From positions 124,001 to 188,000 of IMG/VR virus record IMGVR_UViG_3300023179_005186: DNA of 64,000 bases; one strand, written 5' to 3'. How positions within the stretch are numbered: position 1 is the stretch's first letter; each line of letters begins with the position of its first letter. This document shows positions 15,201-52,502 of the stretch, piece by piece. Made by a program: the position numbers and the translations under genes. Below the pieces are notes generated by a model. The model was not told the DNA's origin. It did not search any database and was given only the letters and a program-made list of their open reading frames with translations.

Positions 15201-16845
15201 AATTGCGGGAAAGTCGTCAATAAGTATACAAATAAAATTGTCTTAAAAATAAAAATATATTATTAAATAATAAAATGTTAAGAGTGTGCAAAATATGTAA
15301 TATTGAAAAAGATATTAATGAGTTTAGATGCAAACTTGTTAAAACTTAAAAGTAAATGATCCTGAAAAATATAAAGAAATAAAAACTAAACAATCTAATA
15401 GAGACAAAAACTACTATGATAATAATAAAGATAGAGTTAATCAAAGAAATGTTTTAACTGGACAAATATTTCACCATTATTAGCATCTGAAAACAGAAAA
15501 AAAATAATAAAATATATGATACACATATTTTAAGACAAGAATTAAGAGTATACTTATTTAAACAGATTATGGATACCGCATCTATATCTAGCGATATAGA
15601 GTAGCAGGTGGTATAATGGCCATCGGATGGTAAAAACTCCATGATACACGGTGACAATCCGCAACCAAGATTTCCAATAATGGGAATAAGGCTCAGAGAC
15701 TAGACGGAAGTGGGCTTGTTTTATTTTAATAAGACAGGCTTAAGGTATAGTCCACCCCCTAATGAAAGTTAGGGGATTAAGTGAGAATGACGATCGCACA
15801 ATTAATTGAATGTTTAATTGGAAAAGTTGCTGCAATTAAAGGTTTAGAAACAGACGGCACATCTTTTAACCAAATAGATATAGAAACAATAAAAAATGAA
15901 TTAGAAAAATTAGGTTATGAAAAAAATTGTAATGAATACTGTTATAATGGTATGACAGGTCAAAGACTTAAAATACCAATGTTTATTGGTCCTACTTATT
16001 ATCAAAGATTAAAACATCTAACCGCTGATAAAATACATTGTTTAACAGGTGATCATGATGTTTTAACAGAAAATGGATGGATAAATATTCAAAATATAAC
16101 TAAAGAAATAAAAGTTTTAACTTTAAAGTCAGATATAGAATTATATGATTATCCAAATCATGTTTATAAATATGAAGATTTAAATGAAAAAATTCTGTAT
16201 CATGTTAAAAATGAAGATATTGATACAATTATGACTGAAGAACATAGAGTTTATATTAATAATAATTTATTAATTAAAATAAATCAACTTGATCATAAAA
16301 ATAATACAATATATAAATGGTATAATAGAAGTAGTTCATTTAATGTTAATCATACTACTGATATCACTATTTATCAATCTAAAGATAATGTTTATTGTTT
16401 AAGTGTTCCAAGTGAAATATTTTATGTTAGAAGAAATGGTAAAGAGTTTTGGACTGGTAATTCTAGAGCTCGAGGACCAAATACAATGCTTACACATCAA
16501 CCACCAGAAGGTAGATCAAAAGATGGTGGATTACGTTGCGGTGAAATGGAGCGTGATTCAATTATAGCACATGGAATGAGTAAATTCTTAAAAGAAAGAT
16601 TTTTAGATGTTTCTGATGCTTACTCATGTTATGTATGTGATATTTGTGGTTTATTCGCACAGCGTGATAAAAAGAAAGATAACAAAACAGTACCACAAAA
16701 TACAGATATTTACAAATGCATTAATTGTAAGAATAAAACAAAAATTTCAAAGGTAATTATTCCTTATGCATTTAAATTACTAATTCAAGAATTAATGTCA
16801 ATGAACATTGCACCAAGAATTAGAACTAAACAATATAGTTTATAA
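9299..16845 (+). CDS. RPB2: RNA polymerase second-largest subunit; exons 9299-14579, 15030-15130 and 15784-16845; three inteins
   Basis: Motifs [56 protein letters not shown] and [11 protein letters not shown]. Joined exons give 6444 nt (2147 aa); removing 954 aa of inteins leaves 1193 aa, a normal RPB2 size. Confidence 0.95.
10787..12115 (+). mobile_element. Intein 1 in RPB2 (443 aa) with a degenerate LAGLIDADG endonuclease
   Basis: GFL|CLTGDTEV...CTPDH...VYDFET...YTSN|CPVESPE. Both LAGLIDADG-like helices have Asn at the acidic position (NIANG, IAGNG). Confidence 0.93.
13457..14566 (+). mobile_element. Intein 2 in RPB2 (370 aa) with a LAGLIDADG endonuclease
   Basis: GDKFC|CFSPDHD...VTPNH...FFGIWMAEG...[10 protein letters not shown]...WCGN|SRHG. 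Confidence 0.93.
14580..15029 (+). mobile_element. Group I intron 1 in RPB2 (450 nt, ORF-less)
   Basis: Removal restores H-G-Q-K-G-T (ggg c|aa aaa ggt) and the intron ends in G. P1 atgggc/acccat; P7-like gactg...cagtc in atcgactggg / taatgtacagtcag; acggtc/gaccgt stem. Confidence 0.88.
15131..15783 (+). mobile_element. Group I intron 2 in RPB2 (653 nt)
   Basis: Removal restores IPS|RMT. The exon ends in U paired with G15138 (gagt/gctc) and the intron ends in G. Classic P (aaattgcgggaa), Q (aatccgcaacc), R (tcagagacta) and S (aaggtatagtc) elements. Confidence 0.93.
15275..15503 (+). pseudogene. Decayed intron-encoded HNH/Zn-finger homing endonuclease
   Basis: [17 protein letters not shown]...stop (15275-15349) and, in another frame, [18 protein letters not shown] (15450-15503); the central part is missing. 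Confidence 0.7.
16039..16461 (+). mobile_element. Mini-intein 3 in RPB2 (141 aa, no endonuclease)
   Basis: DKIH|[14 protein letters not shown]...MTEEH...VYCLSVP...[11 protein letters not shown]|SRARGP. Confidence 0.93.
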
Positions 16846-22058: not shown

Positions 22059-22101
22059 TCAATTTTTTACTTAACTAATATGACTAGCTAGTAAAAATTG
22101 A
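22059..22101. promoter_or_regulatory. Divergent AAAATTGA promoters (RPB5 and ORF 22138)
   Basis: TCAATTTT at 22059-22066; AAAATTGA at 22094-22101. Confidence 0.75.
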
Positions 22102-22137
22102 TTTTTATTTATAAAAACTAGATATAACCAAGAAATA

Positions 22138-23373
22138 ATGATCATGTTAATACATGAGTTAGAAAAATATTTAATAAAATATATTGAATCTAATGAACCA
22201 AAAATAATATATTTTGGGATCGGAAGTGAATTTTATAATTCAAATAATAAAATAAATTTTTGGAAATCAAATGAAAATCAACAATTTCCTTTATTTTTAC
22301 ATGATTTTAAAGAAAAACATATGGATATACAAATAATTATTATTTTAATTGATATTAATATGAGTTTTACACCATATTTAATAACTGAACCTAATAAATT
22401 TTATTCAAATAGTTGGACAAAAGATGAAGAATATTTAAATATTTTTAGATCTAAACATAAAATAGATGTAATAACCATAAAAGATGAAATTTATTGGGAT
22501 GAATTTGAAAAAGTAAATATTACTGAATTATATAATTTTACAAGATTAATAATTTATTTGAGTGAAATAATTTCAAAATCAGATAACTGTTTATTATTTT
22601 ATCATGAATTTACTGGAAAAAATGTTCATAAATTTGAAAATATGATTAATAATTTTTGTTATAATTTTAATTTTGAAAAAATATGTATTGATATTACAAG
22701 AGGTTCTGATTTTTCATGTTATTTTGACTTGTCAAAACCAGAATCATATCCTATAATAACATATTTTGAAAATAAATTAAAATACATAAATCCAAATATG
22801 TTAAAATTAAAACAAAAAAAAAAAATTTGTACAAAATATAACAAAAATGAATTAAATTATTCAAATATATATTATGATAATGAATTTATATTATATAAAC
22901 AAATTATTCAAGAAAATTTAATAATATTAAAATTATTAAATAATACAATTGTTCCATTTATAAGAATATGTGTAATTGAACCAACATTATTTATTACAAG
23001 AGATATGACTAAATTTATTAAAGAATTTACATATTTAGATTATATACAACAAAATAAAGAAATATCAGAATGTTTAACAAATGCTAAAAAAATTTATTAC
23101 AATATTATTAAATATATTAATAAGAATGATTTTAAATATAAATTAGAATGTAAAATTGATATTAAATTAGATGAAAATTTTAATCAATTAATTAACTGTT
23201 TTTTAGAAAATCTTTATGAAACTATTGATTTAATTATTTTTAAAATTGGTTTAAGTTTTAATATAAAAGAGAATTTAATTTATCAATTATGTTGGAATAT
23301 TAGAAATATTAATGATAAATATAAAATTTCTTCATTAATTCAAAATTATTTTTTAGAAAATAACTTGATATAA
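22138..23373 (+). CDS. Hypothetical protein
   Basis: 411-aa ORF preceded by an early promoter. Confidence 0.75.
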   Translation: MIMLIHELEKYLIKYIESNEPKIIYFGIGSEFYNSNNKINFWKSNENQQFPLFLHDFKEKHMDIQIIIILIDINMSFTPYLITEPNKFYSNSWTKDEEYLNIFRSKHKIDVITIKDEIYWDEFEKVNITELYNFTRLIIYLSEIISKSDNCLLFYHEFTGKNVHKFENMINNFCYNFNFEKICIDITRGSDFSCYFDLSKPESYPIITYFENKLKYINPNMLKLKQKKKICTKYNKNELNYSNIYYDNEFILYKQIIQENLIILKLLNNTIVPFIRICVIEPTLFITRDMTKFIKEFTYLDYIQQNKEISECLTNAKKIYYNIIKYINKNDFKYKLECKIDIKLDENFNQLINCFLENLYETIDLIIFKIGLSFNIKENLIYQLCWNIRNINDKYKISSLIQNYFLENNLI

Positions 23374-23393
23374 ATAATTTACATCTTGAAGAT

Positions 23394-23866
23394 TTAAAAA
23401 TGCCTAACTTCGTAAGCGAGTAAAGTTGCAGACAAAATCTGGCTAACCTAGCAAGCGAGTAAGGTTGCAGACAAAGTCAGGCTAACCTCGCAAGCGAGTA
23501 AAGTTGCAGACAAAGTCAGGCTACCGATTTTTATTATAAAATCTACTTAAAGAAATATTACAAATATATATATTTGTAATGAATAAACCTTTTTAGATTT
23601 GCTATTAATCGATAGCCTGACTTTGTCAGCAACCTGATAAATTAGGCAAATGGTTAGGTTATAAAAAAAAAGTTTATTTTCAATTTTTGATGAAAATGAT
23701 GAACTAAAAAAGATATTACTTATAATGAAAATGATTTACCAGAAGATTTAAGATATTTTACTGAACAAGCTGAACCAGCTAAAATTTAATTATTTACATT
23801 TTGATTATTTTTAATCGATTCATATATAACATATTTTATTTATAAATTCATTTTTATATAAATTAA
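23394..23866 (+). repeat. 473-bp direct repeat, copy 1
   Basis: Identical by eye to 25915-26387 (offset 2521); starts and ends with TTAA. Confidence 0.95.
23404..23523 (+). repeat. Three tandem 39-bp palindromic units (also at 25925-26044)
   Basis: Unit ctaacctcgcaagcgagtaaagttgcagacaaagtcagg; a partial inverted copy lies at 23613-23635. Confidence 0.92.
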
Positions 23867-24558
23867 GTGACATTGAAGCACCAATGATACAAACATTTCT
23901 TGATAGATTTTATAAAAACAGAACTGAAATCCGCATTTTACTTGAACAATATTTATCGCTTTTTGAAAATAATAATGATGAAAACTATTTTGGAATAATT
24001 AATTTAAAGAGTGAGCCTATTAAAATTATAAATAATATTATTAGCGATTTACAATTTATAATTAATCAAAATAGATTGGATATATTATTAGATGATATTA
24101 TAAAGGTGCATAATAATGTTAATATTAAAATACCATGTATGGAAAATTATCTTTATTATGTTATTTTTGAATTACTAAAAAATAGCACTCAAGCTGTTTT
24201 AGATAAAAGTAAAATTGAAAATAACTATAAACCATTTATTAATGTTAACATAAATAGTATTGATAGTAATTATATTCTCATAACAATAGAAGATAATGGT
24301 ATTGGTATAAAAGAAAAAAATATGGAAAAAATATGGTATTATAGTTTTACAACATCATTATTTGATTCTGAAAATATTATTGAAGAGAGTGATTTTAATA
24401 CAATAAGTCCTTTATCAGGTTTGGGATATGGATTACCAATATCTGAAATTTACATAAATTTTTTAAATTCATCTAAAAATAATATAAAAATAAATAGTGT
24501 TTACAAAAAAGGAACGACGGTTTATCTATATGTAAAATGTTATAATGAATATTTATAA
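23867..24558 (+). pseudogene. 5'-truncated pyruvate/branched-chain ketoacid dehydrogenase kinase-like gene (GHKL)
   Basis: IQTFLDRFY..R..IR.L..Q, FELLKNS, IEDNGIGI, YSFTT, LSGLGYGLPIS and GTTVY. The N-terminal helical domain is missing and the frame runs back to the repeat junction. Confidence 0.8.
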
Positions 24559-24582
24559 ATATATAAAGAATTTATTAAATTA

Positions 24583-25719
24583 TTATTTTTCCATCATGTC
24601 TAAATATACATTTATAAGTTCTTTATAATTATTTGCATATAATAATCTTAAAAAATATTTTTCAGGAATATCTATTTTTCTCACTGAACACCATCCAAAA
24701 TATTTTTTAAATAATATTGGATGATAATATCTGAACTCTTCATTTATTTTATATAAAATATTATAAAAATAATCATAATTATTATAAAAAGTAGCTTTAG
24801 TTATTTTTTTATCAATTATTAGTTGATCAATACTTTTACTACTTTTCCTATATTTAAATATATATTGTAAATCTTTTTTATATTCTGGATATAGTTCTCC
24901 ATATTTTTCTATTGCATTTTTGAAAAATATTTCATTTTTATTCATTAGTTTCTTCATACCATTACACCATAAATTATTATTTATCCATGGTGATATCTTT
25001 TTTTTAGATTTAATACAATCTTCTATCATTTTTTCATAACTACTTAATAAACGGTATGTGCAAATAAATATTTCAGTAAAAATATGTTTATCTTTATCTA
25101 TTGAAAACATCTTTTTGTATGGATGTCTTTTATAATTTATACCAAACTTTTCATGAGTAACTTCGCCATAATCTATTGCAACACATTGAATTCCATAAAA
25201 TGGAACTTTGTAATTATTTAATGTAAAATATTTTTTTTTAGTTTTAGTTACCATTATATTTGTACCTACATGTAAATCATTATGAGAATAACCTCCGTTA
25301 TATAATATTAAAATTATTTTTATTATTTGTAATAGTATAGACAATCTTCTTTTTTTTGAAAGATTATATTTAGACTCATATTTATCTAATGTATATTTAC
25401 CACAATAATCCATTAAATATTTAACACATAATTGTGATTTTTTTGTTTTTTCTGTTTTTAATTTATCTGTAATATTTTGATAACAGTCATTATTTATTTC
25501 AAAATTATATAAATTTACAAAAAAACTTTTATCTTCATTATTTAACTTAGATATATAATTAAACAAATCAAGTTCTCTAAATATTTTATTTTTAAAACTT
25601 TTTTTTCTTTCATTGTTTAAAATATGTTCAATTTTTAATGCATATTTTTTATCTTTATATTTTACCAAATATGTTTTACCAAAAGTACCTTCACCTAATT
25701 TTTTTATAATTTTTAACAT
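24583..25719 (-). CDS. Protein kinase-like protein
   Basis: LGEGTFGKTY, ALK, HNDLH...N and IDYG. Confidence 0.85.
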   Translation of the reverse strand: MLKIIKKLGEGTFGKTYLVKYKDKKYALKIEHILNNERKKSFKNKIFRELDLFNYISKLNNEDKSFFVNLYNFEINNDCYQNITDKLKTEKTKKSQLCVKYLMDYCGKYTLDKYESKYNLSKKRRLSILLQIIKIILILYNGGYSHNDLHVGTNIMVTKTKKKYFTLNNYKVPFYGIQCVAIDYGEVTHEKFGINYKRHPYKKMFSIDKDKHIFTEIFICTYRLLSSYEKMIEDCIKSKKKISPWINNNLWCNGMKKLMNKNEIFFKNAIEKYGELYPEYKKDLQYIFKYRKSSKSIDQLIIDKKITKATFYNNYDYFYNILYKINEEFRYYHPILFKKYFGWCSVRKIDIPEKYFLRLLYANNYKELINVYLDMMEK

Positions 25720-25796
25720 ATTATAAAATATAGTTATAATATTTTTATCAAAAAGTATATAAAATATTTTTGATTATAATATATTATAATCAAAAA

Positions 25797-25928
25797 ATGT
25801 CATTTTACCATGAAATTATAGATAATTTATATTTAGGAAGTGTTGAAGCATCAAAAGATGACGACTTTATATACAATAAAAAAATAGATGTTATTGTAAA
25901 TTGTTCAAAAGATCTTAAAAATGCCTAA
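25797..25928 (+). pseudogene. 3'-truncated dual-specificity phosphatase
   Basis: MSFYHEIIDNLYLGS...IDVIVNCSKDL, cut by repeat copy 2; no HCxxGxxR. Confidence 0.75.
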
Positions 25929-26387
25929 CTTCGTAAGCGAGTAAAGTTGCAGACAAAATCTGGCTAACCTAGCAAGCGAGTAAGGTTGCAGACAAAGTCA
26001 GGCTAACCTCGCAAGCGAGTAAAGTTGCAGACAAAGTCAGGCTACCGATTTTTATTATAAAATCTACTTAAAGAAATATTACAAATATATATATTTGTAA
26101 TGAATAAACCTTTTTAGATTTGCTATTAATCGATAGCCTGACTTTGTCAGCAACCTGATAAATTAGGCAAATGGTTAGGTTATAAAAAAAAAGTTTATTT
26201 TCAATTTTTGATGAAAATGATGAACTAAAAAAGATATTACTTATAATGAAAATGATTTACCAGAAGATTTAAGATATTTTACTGAACAAGCTGAACCAGC
26301 TAAAATTTAATTATTTACATTTTGATTATTTTTAATCGATTCATATATAACATATTTTATTTATAAATTCATTTTTATATAAATTAA
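25915..26387 (+). repeat. 473-bp direct repeat, copy 2
   Basis: Identical by eye to 23394-23866. Confidence 0.95.
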
Positions 26388-26407
26388 ATTATATTATATA
26401 AATAATT

Positions 26408-26800
26408 ATATCAGATTACAAACAAAAATATCTTAAATACAAACACAAGTACTTAACATTTAGAAATAATATGTATAAACAAAATTGAGTTTCTAAGGAT
26501 GGAATATATGTATTTTTTATTACTAATAATATAAATAATTGGAACTTATATTTTGAAAAATTTATTTATGTTCTTGTGTGATGTATTTTATGGTTGGTTC
26601 AACTTTAACAAGTATAAATATGTTAAACACTTATAAAACTATATCCAAATGAATTAAATGTTGACACCAATACTTGTAATTTAGTTGCTGTTTTTTCAAA
26701 TAATCTTCCTAGTAAAAACTATAAAGATATTACAGTAGAAAAATTGTAAAACATAAAAAAAGAAATCGAAAAATAAGAATAACCTACAAATTAAAGAAAT
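26408..26800 (+). pseudogene. Decayed tandem paralog of ORF 26938-27639
   Basis: (ATA)SDYKQKYLKYKHKYLT, KDGIYVFF, NTYKT and NTC fragments with stops and frameshifts; 3' limit is approximate. Confidence 0.75.
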
Positions 26801-26937
26801 TAATATTATATCTAATATTAAAAGGTAAAATAACAATAAAAGAACATATAAAGTAAATTAAGAGGGAAAATTATATTATCAATAAATATTTAATTATAAC
26901 AGATTTTTTTATAAAAATAATATATATATAATAAATT

Positions 26938-27639
26938 ATGCCAGATTATGAACAAAAGTATTTTAAATACAAAAATAAGTATTTAACATTAAAAAGTAAT
27001 TTAGAAGCACAAACAGGAGGTAATTATTATATGGATGGATATTATGTTTTCTTCATCTATGATCATGATTATAGTAATCCTGATAATACAGTTGTACCAA
27101 ATGATGACTATAAAAAAGATCAACATTATGGAAGAATAAGCATGGATAATTTTACATCAAAAAAAATAAATAATTGTTCCATGTTTTTTAGAATTAGTGA
27201 TGGTAAGTTAGCATTCAACCGAAATGATTCTTTTAATACTTATAATACAGTTTATCCTAATATATCTAATATATATGCTATTGCACCAAAATTTTCTTCA
27301 CAAGCTGAAAATACGTGTCCTTTTAAATCATTTAGATCATCTCAACTTCCTATTTCATCAAGCATGAATTTTAATTTAGACTTTAATATATTAAAAAGTA
27401 TTATAGATGAAATGAAAACAAATATAGCAGACAAGTCTAATAATTTTAAATCAATTTTAGTAGTTAGAAATACAAATGGTTATGTTCAAGTAAGAGCAAG
27501 GTACAAAGTAGTAGAAGGTACCGTGACACAAACACAGGAAGATAGAACTCATCAAACTACACCTTCTGAAAATACTGCACCTCCTGAAAATATTCCACCT
27601 CCTAAACCAGCAAGACATCAAAATCAAAATCAAAATTAA
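26938..27639 (+). CDS. Hypothetical protein with YxxKYxKYKxKYL..LK N-terminal motif
   Basis: MPDYEQKYFKYKNKYLTLK...QTGG, a leader common in Mimiviridae. Confidence 0.75.
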   Translation: MPDYEQKYFKYKNKYLTLKSNLEAQTGGNYYMDGYYVFFIYDHDYSNPDNTVVPNDDYKKDQHYGRISMDNFTSKKINNCSMFFRISDGKLAFNRNDSFNTYNTVYPNISNIYAIAPKFSSQAENTCPFKSFRSSQLPISSSMNFNLDFNILKSIIDEMKTNIADKSNNFKSILVVRNTNGYVQVRARYKVVEGTVTQTQEDRTHQTTPSENTAPPENIPPPKPARHQNQNQN

Positions 27640-27722
27640 AGAAAAATAAAAATCAAATATTTATTGTTCAATTATAAAAAATTAGCTTTGTACCATATTG
27701 GTGTAAAAAATAATGCTTATAC

Positions 27723-27958
27723 TTATTTATTTAAGATTGATTGAATGCCAAGTGAATAAGCATAAGGAGTATTACCATCAGGACAAGTAGAATCAATATC
27801 AGCATTCCATGTTATAACTCCCAACAAACCTTTATTAACATCAAATGTAGTTGAGTTTAGAGAATCTTCTAAAGAAAGAACTCTTGAGATGTCATCGGGA
27901 ACCAGACATAAGCCCGGAAATCATTTTTGGTTGGATCAACTTTCCAATTATTTAAATA
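27723..27958 (-). pseudogene. C-terminal remnant of a GH18 chitinase-like gene
   Basis: Frameshifted YLNNWKVDPTK / MISGLM / ...KGLLGVITWNADID...DGNTPYAYSLGI*, resembling the GH18 beta7-beta8 GxMxW motif. Confidence 0.55.
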
Positions 27959-28169
27959 ATAGAGTTTGATACAAAATGATACAAAATCATACACACGCAA
28001 ACGTGCAAATTATGATTTTGTTAAGGTGACAATCCTAACTGATTTATTGACAGTTGTCTCATTTTAAATCTTCAAGGTTGTAAAAAGGGTCTTACTCTAA
28101 ATATTTTTTTTAACAAAATTTGAAATTTACTAATAATATTTATAAGTAAATTATTATACATATATAATC

Positions 28170-49899: not shown

Positions 49900-50282
49900 T
49901 TTGTTCAAAAACTTTCTTTTTACTTTAACTCTAAAGATTCTGAATTTATTGTTAATACACAAAATATTAGTACAAAGCTAAATAATTTAATTCAACAAGT
50001 TATTATTAGAACTCCTATTTATAATAAATGTGGAAAAAAATTGAATATAAAGCTAATAAGTTTCTTCTACAGAAATGCTTGTTAGAATTTATAATACATA
50101 CTTTATTGAAGGAAAAGGAACAATTAATTGGAAATACTCATTTATCAACGATAAACCTAATTTTTTATATCCTGTAGGTGTAATGGCTGAATCAAATATA
50201 GTGTTAGGCACTGGTATTTTTTTAATTTGAAAGGTAGTTACATTATATCCTACTCATGATTTATTAAAAAATGTAAAAATAT
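49900..50282 (+). pseudogene. Degraded ORF abutting element B
   Basis: Frameshifted coding-like segments TPIYNKCGKK and YNTYFIEGKGTINWKYSF...VLGTGIF; limits are approximate. Confidence 0.45.
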
Positions 50283-50284
50283 TA

Positions 50285-50548
50285 CACCCATTTACAAAAA
50301 AATGGGACAGTTTTATTTATGTTTTTTTAAAAATTCATTTGCTCTTAAAAAAGAAAGACCTTTAAAATATAAAAGGAATTATGATTTAGAAAAAGGAGAG
50401 ATAATAAAAGAAATAAAACAAAAGGTGATAACCCCTAACAAAAATGACACTACAAATCAGGGGGTCAAGTATCAACCAAGCCTATAATAGGTGCAATTAT
50501 GCCTTTAATTTACAAATTAAGAGTGTCCCACTTTTTTGTAAATGGGTG
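50285..50548. mobile_element. Element B: 264-bp MITE-like element with TA duplication
   Basis: TA|CACCCATTTACAAAAAAATGGGACA ... TGTCCCACTTTTTTGTAAATGGGTG|TA; TIRs match at 24 of 25 positions. Confidence 0.88.
50424..50523 (+). ncRNA. Candidate structured RNA (omega-RNA-like) abutting the right TIR of element B
   Basis: Stems ggtgata/tatcaacc, acccct/gggggt, gccta/taggt and ttaatt/aattaa. Confidence 0.4.
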
Positions 50549-50614
50549 TAATAAATAATATAAAATTAATATTTTTTAACAAAAAAATTTTTATATAACC
50601 CTTATATATATAAA

Positions 50615-51608: not shown

Positions 51609-51666
51609 AATTTATTTTTACTTAATATATTAAATATTACATTAAATATAATATATGTTTAATTTA

Positions 51667-51693
51667 GAGCGGTGCGTATTTTAAATGCCGATT
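51667..51693 (+). mobile_element. Solo TIR-like end (element D)
   Basis: TA|GAGCGGTGCGT-ATTTTAAATGCCGATT; same 11-nt spacing to ATTTNAAAYG as the ends of A and C; no partner seen. Confidence 0.5.
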
Positions 51694-51836
51694 TTAATGA
51701 CAAAAAAAATATTTATAACTAGATGAATTTAAGATCATTAATAACATAAAATAGTTTATTATCTATACAGATGATAAATATTTATTAACATATTTTATTT
51801 TAGATGTTAAATAGATGTAATAAATATACTAAATAA

Positions 51837-51886: not shown

Positions 51887-51945
51887 ATTTAAGAGGATTT
51901 AGAATTTTTATTTAGATTTCTGGTCTTGAGATGATAAAGTTTTTA

Positions 51946-52502
51946 CACCTTTTCTCATTTGAAACGCCCATTTATAATAAAAAAAATTGAAACACTTTTA
52001 TTATATTGTACTATTATTACATAAAACACATTTATCTGTAAAATGTATGCCGTTGTTAGATATAACGATTATCGTAAAGAACAAGATTTTGAAATCATTG
52101 CAACTACTACTGATGTAGAATATGCTAAAAAAATAGCATTTAATAAAATCAAAGAAAACATACAAAACATGCCTGAATGTAAAAATGACGATGAACTTTA
52201 TAAAATAGAAACATATATTGAAACAGAATATTTCCAACCAATAAATAAAGAAATAATATCTTATAGAATTATCAAAGTAAAAAAGTGTAAAAACAAATTC
52301 AAAAAAATATATCATTATACAACTAAATATGCTGTTGTTGAATTTGCAGTAGGAAATTCTGAAAATTTAGAAGAAATAGATACTTCTCTCATATGTGATG
52401 ATTATATTATTGATGACGATGAATAAAAAGCAAATAAAAATGGAGGGAAACCTCTTTTTTTATTTACTCCCATAATGTGGGCGTTTTAAATGAGAAAATG
52501 TG
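51946..52502. mobile_element. Element C: 557-bp TIR element carrying one cargo gene
   Basis: TA|CACCTTTTCTCATTTGAAACGCCCA ... TGGGCGTTTTAAATGAGAAAATGTG|TA; TIRs match at 23 of 25 positions. Confidence 0.9.
52043..52426 (+). CDS. Hypothetical cargo protein of element C
   Basis: 127 aa; own AAAATTGA at 51983-51990 and a 3' hairpin gagg-gaaa-cctc. Confidence 0.8.
   Translation: MYAVVRYNDYRKEQDFEIIATTTDVEYAKKIAFNKIKENIQNMPECKNDDELYKIETYIETEYFQPINKEIISYRIIKVKKCKNKFKKIYHYTTKYAVVEFAVGNSENLEEIDTSLICDDYIIDDDE

What the first reader, a model, noticed from the sequence alone, without database searches (positions are those of the whole stretch)
23404..23660. 39-bp double-hairpin tandem array inserted into a TIR
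Seen: three GC-rich units, each with ctcg-caag-cgag and gac-aaa-gtc hairpin-type motifs, split what reads AAATGCCGATT in the solo end D (here aaatgc[array]ccgatt). About 90 bp downstream an inverted unit keeps both flanks (ctaacc...aggttgctgacaaagtcaggcta on the minus strand) but has a different middle. A minus-strand AAAATTGA at 23680-23687 points into it. Inference: a REP-like micro-element with a constant frame and variable core, possibly transcribed or processed by an HUH-type enzyme.
Basis: partly seen in the sequence, partly recalled or inferred. Interest (0 to 1): 0.6.

Follow-up and report, generated by a model that had tools for sequence, protein, structure and literature searches.

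The report
Hairpin micro-insert inside a giant-virus transposon end
The three GC-rich 39-bp repeats are copies of a small, precisely bounded insert that sits at one fixed site in the terminal inverted repeat of a DNA transposon family common in giant viruses; this is a new variant of the hairpin "micro-parasites" known from mitochondria and bacteria, with no function shown for the virus.

Summary
Window 23404-23524 carries 3 tandem 39-bp units (about 48% GC in a 20% GC genome). An inverted variant unit lies at 23613-23657.

New facts:
- The whole structure lies in a perfect 473-bp direct repeat, 23394-23866 = 25915-26387. This repeat flanks a 5'-truncated PDK-like kinase gene, a Ser/Thr kinase gene and a phosphatase-like fragment.
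It is present in at least 119 IMG/VR giant-virus contigs, none of which carries the unit.
- The single 43-nt unit is a clean indel at TGC^CGA of that TIR. It is filled in 5 other metagenome contigs and empty in many near-identical copies and in "solo end D".
- Units are 43/43 identical between contigs whose flanks are unrelated.
- A 35-nt relative interrupts a methyltransferase ORF at a similar site.
- In this 316-kb contig the motif occurs only at this duplicated locus.

Best reading: a rare, site-specific, hairpin-forming micro-element nested in a transposon TIR. It was expanded to three copies by slippage, then copied by a microhomology-mediated segmental duplication.

The CRISPR-like "variable core" idea is not supported. 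No Y1 HUH transposase domain was found in the 316-kb contig, and transcription is unresolved.

The parts
23378..23403 (+). Outer 26 nt of the left terminal inverted repeat of an IS630/Tc1-like MITE. It ends in ...AAAATGC, the 5' side of the insertion site.
   Evidence: Matches the 25-nt TIR found in 134 copies on 119 IMG/VR giant-virus loci. The same TIR lies 50-65 nt upstream of DDE_3+HTH transposase ORFs.
23404..23524 (+). Nested insert: three tandem 39-nt units (23404-23442, 23443-23481, 23482-23520) plus a terminal CTAC. A single unit elsewhere is 43 nt.
   Evidence: Empty-site alignments A4 and A5. The units differ from the 43-nt consensus at 2-5 positions, several of them in stem positions.
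23525..23612 (+). Internal MITE sequence between the two unit-bearing ends. It includes a perfect 24-nt AT palindrome at 23557-23580.
   Evidence: Homologous to the 277-bp MITE in L037 and the 151-bp MITE in L050 (alignment A2).
23613..23657 (-). Single inverted unit at the mirror-image site of the right TIR. The second hairpin is intact (CTGAC/GTCAG) and the first hairpin is replaced by AT-rich sequence. The outer 25 nt of the right TIR are missing beyond it.
23680..23687 (-). AAAATTGA (Mimiviridae-type early promoter octamer) pointing toward the inverted unit. No ORF lies downstream.
   Evidence: 130 copies in the genome. 42 lie within 120 nt upstream of ORFs, against 1-7 for control octamers. 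The rest are at background level.
23394..23866 (+). Copy 1 of the perfect 473-bp direct repeat R. It contains most of the left TIR, the array, the MITE interior, the inverted unit and 209 nt beyond.
   Evidence: In the source run R is a separate 473-nt contig at about twice the depth of its neighbour (table 8).
25915..26387 (+). Copy 2 of R, 100% identical (array at 25925-26045, inverted unit at 26134-26178). It lacks the outer 16 nt of the TIR. Its junctions share 5-nt (AAGAT) and 7-nt (AAATTAA) microhomologies with copy 1's flanks.
23867..24558 (+). 5'-truncated PDK/BCKDK-like kinase gene (ORF from 23884). Homology starts at about residue 134 of the full-length 355-364 aa relatives, exactly at the end of R.
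   Evidence: Pfam BCDHK_Adom3 positions 118-160 only, plus HATPase_c. Full-length homologues in L013 and L015. tblastn.
24583..25719 (-). Ser/Thr protein kinase-like gene between the two R copies.
   Evidence: Pfam Pkinase hit, E 1.4e-05, below the curated cut-off.
25797..25914 (+). 39-codon N-terminal fragment of a dual-specificity-phosphatase-like gene, cut off by R copy 2.
   Evidence: The only Pfam hit is DSPc positions 1-31 of 133, E 0.065, which is weak. Sequence.
27995..28088 (-). Right half of another MITE of the same family, with its TIR at 28060-28088 and no unit. It marks the right edge of a roughly 6-kb lineage-specific island (about 22080-28110).
   Evidence: The relative L145 has Rpb5 and the topoisomerase gene 175 bp apart with nothing in between.
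51672..51720 (+). 'Solo end D': a TIR remnant with the uninterrupted site AAATGC|CGATTTTA and a downstream flank like that of L007.

Best explanation
The unit is a short selfish insert: 43 nt when single, with a 39-nt period in tandem. It is about 50% GC, and a conserved hairpin fold is predicted for its 3' half.

It enters DNA at a specific short site (TGC^CGA, more loosely TKC^CRA), in one orientation and without a target duplication. In this lineage its usual landing site is nucleotide 22/23 of the terminal inverted repeat of an IS630/Tc1-like transposon/MITE that is widespread in giant viruses. It is therefore a parasite nested in a parasite.

Proposed history in the window's virus:
1. Both ends of one MITE were hit.
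2. The left insert expanded to three copies by slippage or unequal exchange on its CTA(A/C)C termini.
3. The copies began to decay.
4. A 473-bp block containing everything was copied 2.5 kb away by a microhomology-mediated rearrangement. That event left truncated kinase and phosphatase-like genes.

Shown: the precise indel, the fixed site and orientation, identical units in unrelated flanks, the tandem and duplicated state, and the identity of the host transposon.

Inferred: that the unit moves by itself, the enzyme that moves it (unknown), slippage as the origin of the array, and the absence of any benefit to the virus.
For: (1) Clean 43-nt presence/absence. L007 differs from L057, L066, L036 and L095 by this indel, with about 140 nt of otherwise near-identical flank (A4). 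A second, diverged TIR subfamily is filled in L004, L005 and L010. It is empty in this genome at 296497 and in 3 of the 4 copies in L015 (A5). Window 51683 is also empty.

(2) None of 134 TIR copies in about 1.04 Mb of IMG/VR giant-virus loci has a unit. Only the 14 copies whose TIR continues with CCGA offer the site.

(3) Units are 43/43 identical among L003, L004+ and L007, while their 60-nt flanks are only 55-70% alike.

(4) A 35-nt relative sharing the second hairpin sits inside a Methyltransf_24 ORF in L009 and L011. An uninterrupted paralogue lies next door (A1). The unit is 35/35 identical between the two contigs, while the flanks are 78% alike (192/247).

(5) Hairpin 2 pairs in 92% of cells. 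It shows one compensatory T-A to A-T switch: 5 versus 3 of 10 distinct sequences.

(6) Host element: a 25-nt TIR; nine inverted pairs 109-1362 bp apart, with TA flanks in the seven examined; adjacent DDE_3+HTH transposase ORFs.

(7) The array and both repeat copies are reproduced in other runs and in another assembly.
Against: - The family is small. There are 8 units at one duplicated locus in 316 kb, plus 7 other metagenome contigs. None was found in IMG/VR or in 185,579 prokaryote genomes beyond chance hits.
- No mobilising enzyme is identified.
- Single units do not fold significantly better than shuffles (z -0.3 to -1.7).
- The covariation rests on one base pair.
- All main-type units sit in one kind of host sequence. 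Inheritance with MITE lineages, followed by precise loss, cannot be formally excluded.
- The collection scans were exact-match only, so diverged units would be missed.
Confidence: 0.6

Rival explanations
1. Passive passenger. The 43 nt arose once as an indel in one MITE copy. It spread only because that MITE transposed, or by gene conversion between TIR copies. The unit has no mobility of its own.
For: All main-type units lie at the same TIR position. Unit subtype b goes with one TIR subfamily (L004-, L005, L010). Elements with both ends filled (the window, L004) could reflect conversion between the two ends.
Against: - Filled and empty states occur within two diverged TIR subfamilies.
- Identical units sit in flanks that share only about 22 nt upstream and CGA downstream. 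That is too little homology for precise conversion.
- A relative lies in a methyltransferase ORF with no TIR around it.
Confidence: 0.2
2. Exapted structural signal. The unit, or the long hairpin it makes with its inverted partner, serves the virus or the transposon. One candidate role is the palindromic 3'-end-formation signal of Mimiviridae-type transcripts (the 'hairpin rule') for the ORF ending at 23373. Another is a protein-binding site.
For: - The RNA fold of 23374-23665 has an MFE of -88.8 kcal/mol, z -7.9, and 0 of 200 shuffles fold as well.
- It starts 5 nt after the stop codon of ORF 22138-23373.
- The unit sequence is more conserved than its flanks.
- An RNA-library contig covers 25915-26095.
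Against: - Any MITE gives such a hairpin without the unit.
- The window's own units carry stem-breaking changes.
- Most copies of the transposon lack the unit.
- The close relative L145 has no such element at this locus.
- The RNA evidence is contigs only, with no strand or end information.
Confidence: 0.1
3. Tolerated coding interruption. At least the 35-nt version is removed from the message or hopped over by the ribosome, as in T4 gene 60 or the mitochondrial 'byps'. Genes carrying it would then stay functional.
For: - The methyltransferase half downstream of the insert shows dN/dS of about 0.18 between L009 and L011 (dS 0.92). The upstream half shows 0.51.
- In L011 the last sense codon TGG is followed at once by TAG and a hairpin. 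The insert ends in GGG just before the resuming codon (read).
Against: - The L009 copy also has a 2-nt frameshift upstream and an intact paralogue beside it, which fits a pseudogene.
- Recent independent insertion would give the same dN/dS.
- The take-off and landing triplets differ.
- No RNA or protein data exist.
- The window's copies are non-coding.
Confidence: 0.06
4. Repeat-spacer immunity array (CRISPR- or MIMIVIRE-like) with a constant frame and variable cores copied from invaders.
For: The inverted unit keeps its frame but has a different middle.
Against: - The units abut with no spacers.
- The three cores differ by 1-3 point changes.
- Other variants are mutated or shortened first hairpins.
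- There is one locus per genome.
- No core matches anything else in 1.58 Mb of held giant-virus DNA.
Confidence: 0.02

Closest known systems
Mobile G+C clusters of yeast mitochondrial DNA, and the double-hairpin / repetitive hairpin-forming elements of fungal and sponge mitochondria
   Same: - Short (30-60 nt) GC-rich hairpin-forming inserts in a very AT-rich genome.
- They occur as single elements and as tandem arrays.
- They lie mostly between genes and occasionally inside them.
- They are associated with rearrangements.
   Basis: general knowledge, plus PMC2800124 and the titles it cites (Weiller 1989, 1991; Dieckmann & Gandy 1987).
   Different: - The host is a giant-virus genome, not an organelle.
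- Copy number is very low.
- The landing site lies inside the TIR of another transposon.
Bacterial REP/BIME elements and IS200/IS605-derived PATEs (mobilised by Y1 HUH transposases)
   Same: - No TIR and no target duplication.
- Fixed orientation next to a short specific sequence.
- Hairpins near the ends.
- The reverse strand starts with GTAG followed by a hairpin, as REPs do.
- Inverted pairs occur.
   Different: - No Y1 transposase domain in 316 kb.
- Few copies.
- Smaller than known PATEs.
- The mechanism was not tested.
- The resemblance is partly recalled from memory.
MITEs in giant viruses (Pandoravirus 'submariner', Pithovirus M1/M2; PMC4495683, PMC6004678, PMC10664404)
   Same: The host element of the unit is a MITE/transposon with TIRs, TA flanks and a DDE transposase partner, living in giant-virus genomes.
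   Different: - The unit itself has no TIRs or TSD and is 5-10 times shorter than a MITE.
- A search of the paper library for a 17-nt core of the host TIR (CTTGAAGATTTAAAATG) found nothing.
Rickettsia palindromic elements
   Same: Hairpin-forming repeats that can lie inside protein-coding genes.
   Different: RPEs are 100-150 bp and insert in frame. The 35-nt unit here breaks the frame and brings a stop codon.

Membership tests
MITE / IS630-Tc1-mariner transposon (applies to the host element, not the unit) | Terminal inverted repeats | tested here: met
   The 25-nt TIR is conserved in 134 copies. Nine inverted pairs lie 109-1362 bp apart. In the window the left TIR is at 23378-23403, and the right outer TIR is deleted.
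MITE / IS630-Tc1-mariner transposon (applies to the host element, not the unit) | TA target-site duplication | tested here: inconclusive
   All 7 pairs examined read TA|CACC...GGTG|TA. TA is invariant in every copy, so it cannot be separated from the TIR itself.
MITE / IS630-Tc1-mariner transposon (applies to the host element, not the unit) | Autonomous partner with a DDE transposase | tested here: met
   ORFs that start 50-65 nt inside the TIR carry DDE_3 plus HTH domains (L033 E 2.9e-14; this genome at L136:1336-2352, E 2.2e-15)..
MITE (applied to the 39/43-nt unit itself) | Own TIRs and target-site duplication | tested here: not met
   The unit ends are CTAAC... and ...GGCTAC. Empty and filled sites show no duplicated target (A4, A5, A1).
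REP / RAYT system | Imperfect palindrome preceded by a conserved GTAG | tested here: met
   The reverse strand of every unit begins GTAGCC, followed by the 5-bp stem and 3-nt loop hairpin. The defining feature itself is taken from memory.
REP / RAYT system | Tens to hundreds of intergenic copies per genome | tested here: not met
   Eight units, all inside the two copies of one 473-bp repeat.
REP / RAYT system | Cognate Y1 HUH transposase gene | tested here: not met
   PF01797 gives no match at E<=1 in the 316-kb contig. The contig is about 28% complete and the virus is at least 524 kb, so the gene may lie elsewhere or in the host.
IS200/IS605-type PATE | Insertion 3' of a fixed tetra- or pentanucleotide, one orientation, no TSD | tested here: met
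   (A/T)TGC^ or ACGC^ (that is, GC^) precedes every unit and C(G/A)A follows it. This holds in the TIR contexts and in the methyltransferase ORF.
IS200/IS605-type PATE | Single-strand excision and integration by TnpA | not testable with these tools
   Needs biochemistry. A TnpB/Fanzor-like ORF exists at genome 296105, but no TnpA was found.
Mitochondrial-type GC cluster / double-hairpin element | Short GC-rich hairpin element in an AT-rich genome, found single and in tandem | tested here: met
   The array islands are 48% GC against 20.2% for the genome. Single units occur in 7 contigs and a 3-unit array here. Hairpin 2 is conserved; hairpin 1 is present only in one subtype.
Mitochondrial-type GC cluster / double-hairpin element | Many dispersed copies within one genome | tested here: not met
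   One duplicated locus only.
CRISPR / MIMIVIRE-like array | Repeats separated by unique invader-derived spacers | tested here: not met
   The units are contiguous and the cores are near-identical.

The most novel reading that the evidence does not exclude
The unit is an active, trans-mobilised, site-specific micro-transposon of giant viruses. It preys on the TIR of another transposon, making it a hyperparasite. It may move by a single-strand (HUH/IS200-like) route. Its 35-nt form may be tolerated inside genes because it is spliced out or translationally bypassed.
Probability: 0.15. Interest if true: 0.8.

Novelty: new variant of a known kind. Interest (0 to 1): 0.55.

Why it matters
Giant-virus genomes are known to carry transposons and MITEs. 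I know of no report of mitochondria- or REP-style hairpin micro-inserts in them, and my paper searches found none.

This case gives a defined 35-43-nt element with clear empty and filled sites and a short target. It also has a host transposon family that is itself abundant in lake giant viruses: at least 119 IMG/VR contigs, and roughly 10-30 times the surrounding depth at the TIR in each run laid.

It offers a tractable system for three questions. How do such micro-elements move? Do they disable their host transposon? The insert splits the TIR at nt 22/23. Do they seed rearrangements? Here the boundaries of the duplicated block and the deleted TIR lie at or near the element.

If the element is only a passive indel, the finding is a minor annotation detail.

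Tried and rejected
- Rfam: no family matches the unit-bearing loci, including the window's own copy L008 (E<=1). The whole window at gathering thresholds also gave nothing. That fast scan missed a group I intron which a local scan found, so only the E-value scan counts.
- Unit searches in IMG/VR with three patterns gave only chance hits in unrelated GC-richer phage contigs.
- One chance hit in the prokaryote genome collection. A bacterial REP origin is therefore not supported.
- nhmmer profile of the unit against 1.58 Mb of held DNA: no further copies.
- Word search with the ORF that starts in the 35-nt unit (L011:1374-1583) found only itself.
- Searching the records behind L003, L004, L007, L009 and L011 for PF01797 failed because those records are not held.
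- The ORF upstream of the array (22138-23373) has no Pfam family and no IMG/VR relative.
- The missing 5' part of the PDK-like gene is not elsewhere in the 316-kb contig. No DSPc gene reaches the cut-off in the contig.
- A literature search for a 17-nt core of the TIR found no paper. A search on IS630, Mimiviridae and transposase listed four papers whose titles and abstracts do not concern this family; I did not read them.
- Reading the flanks of the unit as remnants of the methyltransferase gene was considered and dropped once the flanks proved to be the transposon TIR.
- Assembly artefact was rejected.

Full report
WHAT IS THERE

The window belongs to a single 315,722-bp contig with 20.2% GC. 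IMG/VR classes it as a virus record, about 28% complete by CheckV. Genes around the finding are typical of large Mimiviridae-like viruses:
- Rpb5, topoisomerase IA and Rpb6;
- the octamer AAAATTGA is enriched upstream of ORFs, with 42 of 130 copies within 120 nt of an ORF start against 1-7 for control octamers.

At 23404-23524 there are three head-to-tail 39-nt units plus a terminal CTAC. They are about 48% GC. A further unit lies inverted at 23613-23657. It has the same 5' CTAACC and the same 3' half but a different, AT-rich middle.

THE LOCUS IS DUPLICATED

The array, the spacer, the inverted unit and 209 nt beyond form a 473-bp block, 23394-23866. It recurs with 100% identity at 25915-26387. 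Between the copies lie three things:
- A PDK/BCKDK-like kinase gene whose first ~133 codons are missing. Homology to the full-length 355-364 aa relatives in L013 and L015 starts at the very end of the block.
- A Ser/Thr kinase-like gene.
- A 39-codon start of a phosphatase-like ORF, cut by the second copy.

The junctions show 5-nt and 7-nt microhomologies. This fits a template-switch or illegitimate-recombination event.

The structure is real. In the probable source run the block is a separate 473-nt contig at about twice the neighbouring depth. Contigs from two other studies span 23331-23905 and 23060-23791 without a difference. A 524,495-bp ENA contig is identical over this region and carries both copies. 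I could not establish whether that ENA assembly rests on different reads.

A relative with 82% topoisomerase identity (L145) has Rpb5 and the topoisomerase gene 175 bp apart. Window ~22080-28110 is therefore a lineage-specific ~6-kb island.

WHAT THE FLANKS ARE

The sequence just upstream of the array (23378-23403) is the end of a transposon.
- Nine copies form inverted pairs 109-1362 bp apart, and the seven pairs examined read TA|CACC...GGTG|TA.
- Many copies are followed after 50-65 nt by an ORF with HTH and DDE_3 domains, that is, an IS630/Tc1-like transposase.
- This genome has two such transposase genes and further TIR copies.
- The window's element aligns with short MITEs in L037 and L050 (A2).

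The right outer TIR of the window's MITE is missing beyond the inverted unit.

THE UNIT IS A PRECISE NESTED INSERT

An exact-pattern scan of JGI metagenomes found the unit in seven contigs other than the window's own, as single copies.
- L007 comes from the same metagenome. Its element is identical to L057 and nearly so to L066, L036 and L095 over about 140 nt, except for a clean 43-nt gap between ...AAAATGC and CGATTTT... (A4).
- A second, diverged TIR subfamily is filled in L004, L005 and L010. It is empty in this genome (296497) and in 3 of the 4 copies in L015 (A5).
- Window 51683 ('solo end D') is another empty site.
- None of the 134 IMG/VR TIR copies carries a unit. Only the 14 whose TIR continues with CCGA offer the site.
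- Units are 43/43 identical in L003, L004+ and L007, although the surrounding 60 nt are 55-70% alike.
- In the window and in L004, both ends of one element are filled, in mirror orientation.

A RELATIVE INSIDE A GENE

In L009 and L011 a 35-nt version has the same second hairpin and a shorter first part. It interrupts a Methyltransf_24 ORF between ...SW and QILKP..., breaking the frame and bringing a stop codon. L009 also holds an uninterrupted paralogue that defines the empty site (A1). The site resembles the TIR site: TKC^CRA.

The 35 nt are identical in the two contigs, although the flanks are 78% alike. At 78% identity, 35 of 35 matches have a chance of about 2e-4 (my calculation).

The gene half downstream of the insert shows dN/dS of about 0.18, and the upstream half 0.51. 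There are two possible readings. The insert may have arrived recently and separately in both lineages. Alternatively it may be tolerated. The L009 copy also has a 2-nt frameshift, which favours inactivation.

STRUCTURE

The 3' half of the unit can form a 9-bp interrupted hairpin.
- It pairs in 92% of cells and shows one compensatory T-A to A-T change.
- The 4-bp first hairpin exists only in the main subtype.
- Single units are not more stable than shuffled sequence (z -0.3 to -1.7).
- The window's own units carry stem-breaking changes, as expected for decaying copies.
- The whole MITE with its units folds into a long hairpin (z -7.9). Any inverted-repeat element would do that.

INTERPRETATION

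The simplest account of these facts is a rare, site- and orientation-specific micro-element that lands in the TIR of a common giant-virus transposon. The facts are a precise indel, a fixed site in unrelated contexts, units identical in unrelated flanks, no TSD and no TIR.

Two features then need separate explanations. The 39-nt period (43 minus the shared CTA-C) fits slippage between the similar unit termini rather than repeated insertion. The duplication of the 473-bp block is a separate, later event.

Rivals are given in their own section: a passive passenger, an exapted hairpin signal, a bypassed or spliced coding insert, and an immunity array. The first cannot be excluded. The last is contradicted.

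- No Y1 HUH transposase domain is found in 316 kb.
- A TnpB/Fanzor-like ORF and DDE transposases are present, but nothing ties them to the unit.
- The minus-strand AAAATTGA has no gene behind it and may be background.
- An RNA-library contig covers the array, but contigs cannot show strand, ends or freedom from DNA.

COMPARISON AND NOVELTY

In behaviour the unit is closest to the mobile GC clusters and double-hairpin elements of AT-rich mitochondrial genomes and to bacterial REP/PATE elements. It fails the copy-number criterion of all of these, and the enzyme criterion of the bacterial ones.

Giant-virus MITEs are known, but the unit is not a MITE. I found no paper containing a 17-nt core of the host TIR.

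I rate it a new variant of a known kind, of moderate interest.

LIMITS

- The collection scans need exact words, so diverged units are invisible.
- The metagenome scan could be run only once.

Noticed in passing
In the lake runs the bin that holds the TIR end has roughly 10-30 times the depth of its neighbours. I found no paper containing a 17-nt core of the TIR.
   Followed up: partly
G000:C1:290423-296497 (outside the window) and L015:56-5007: A pair of inverted TIRs of the same family encloses both a DDE_3 transposase gene and a 664-667 aa TnpB/Fanzor-like ORF. This suggests a composite transposon that carries an RNA-guided-nuclease homologue.
   Followed up: no
L016-L134, about 35-75 nt inside the TIR: The MITE interior has a short hairpin between CAAGGTT and GTGTAAATT. 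Its stem sequence changes in a compensatory way between copies (for example GCCT..AGGC, GCTT..AAGC, GACT..AGTC, GGGG..CCCC). Seen by eye in the listing and not quantified.
   Followed up: no
window 50280-50553: A 274-bp element with 39-nt inverted arms that are 90% complementary. Its ends begin TATTACACCC, like the TIR family above. It is probably another MITE.
   Followed up: no
window 51940-51975 and 51660-51672: A further TIR-like end (TTTTACACCTTTT...AAACGCC) lies 260 nt from solo end D. The GC-rich motif GAGCGGTGCGT beside D recurs in L004:1183-1200 on the same (+) strand as in the window, and as the flank of a TIR in L021.
   Followed up: no
window 15533-15774: A group I intron (Rfam RF00028, 58.1 bits, E 1.3e-13) lies inside a run of GC-rich blocks at 14.5-15.8 kb. 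The whole-window scan at gathering thresholds missed it.
   Followed up: partly
G000:C1:65821-65976 and 66385-66481 (outside the window): A second GC-rich (51-54%) repeat array, built of GTGTGGAGCAGT-like units, with hairpin-like repeats (TTGCTCCAAGTTGGAGCAA) nearby.
   Followed up: no
window 26400-26470: A decayed copy of the first ~20 codons of ORF 26938-27639 lies just after the second copy of the 473-bp repeat. Window 27741-27959 has a 77% identical paralogue at genome 307855-308071.
   Followed up: no
L005:2425-2435: An 11-nt extra piece (CCTAACGTGTG) inside the TIR, 7 nt upstream of the unit. It starts with the unit's own first six bases.
   Followed up: no
L007:1877-1900 (minus strand): A ubiquitin-like ORF on the opposite strand loses its last ~11 codons where the MITE fragment begins, and ends at a stop codon supplied by the element. 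The ORF on the other side also stops inside the TIR.
   Followed up: no
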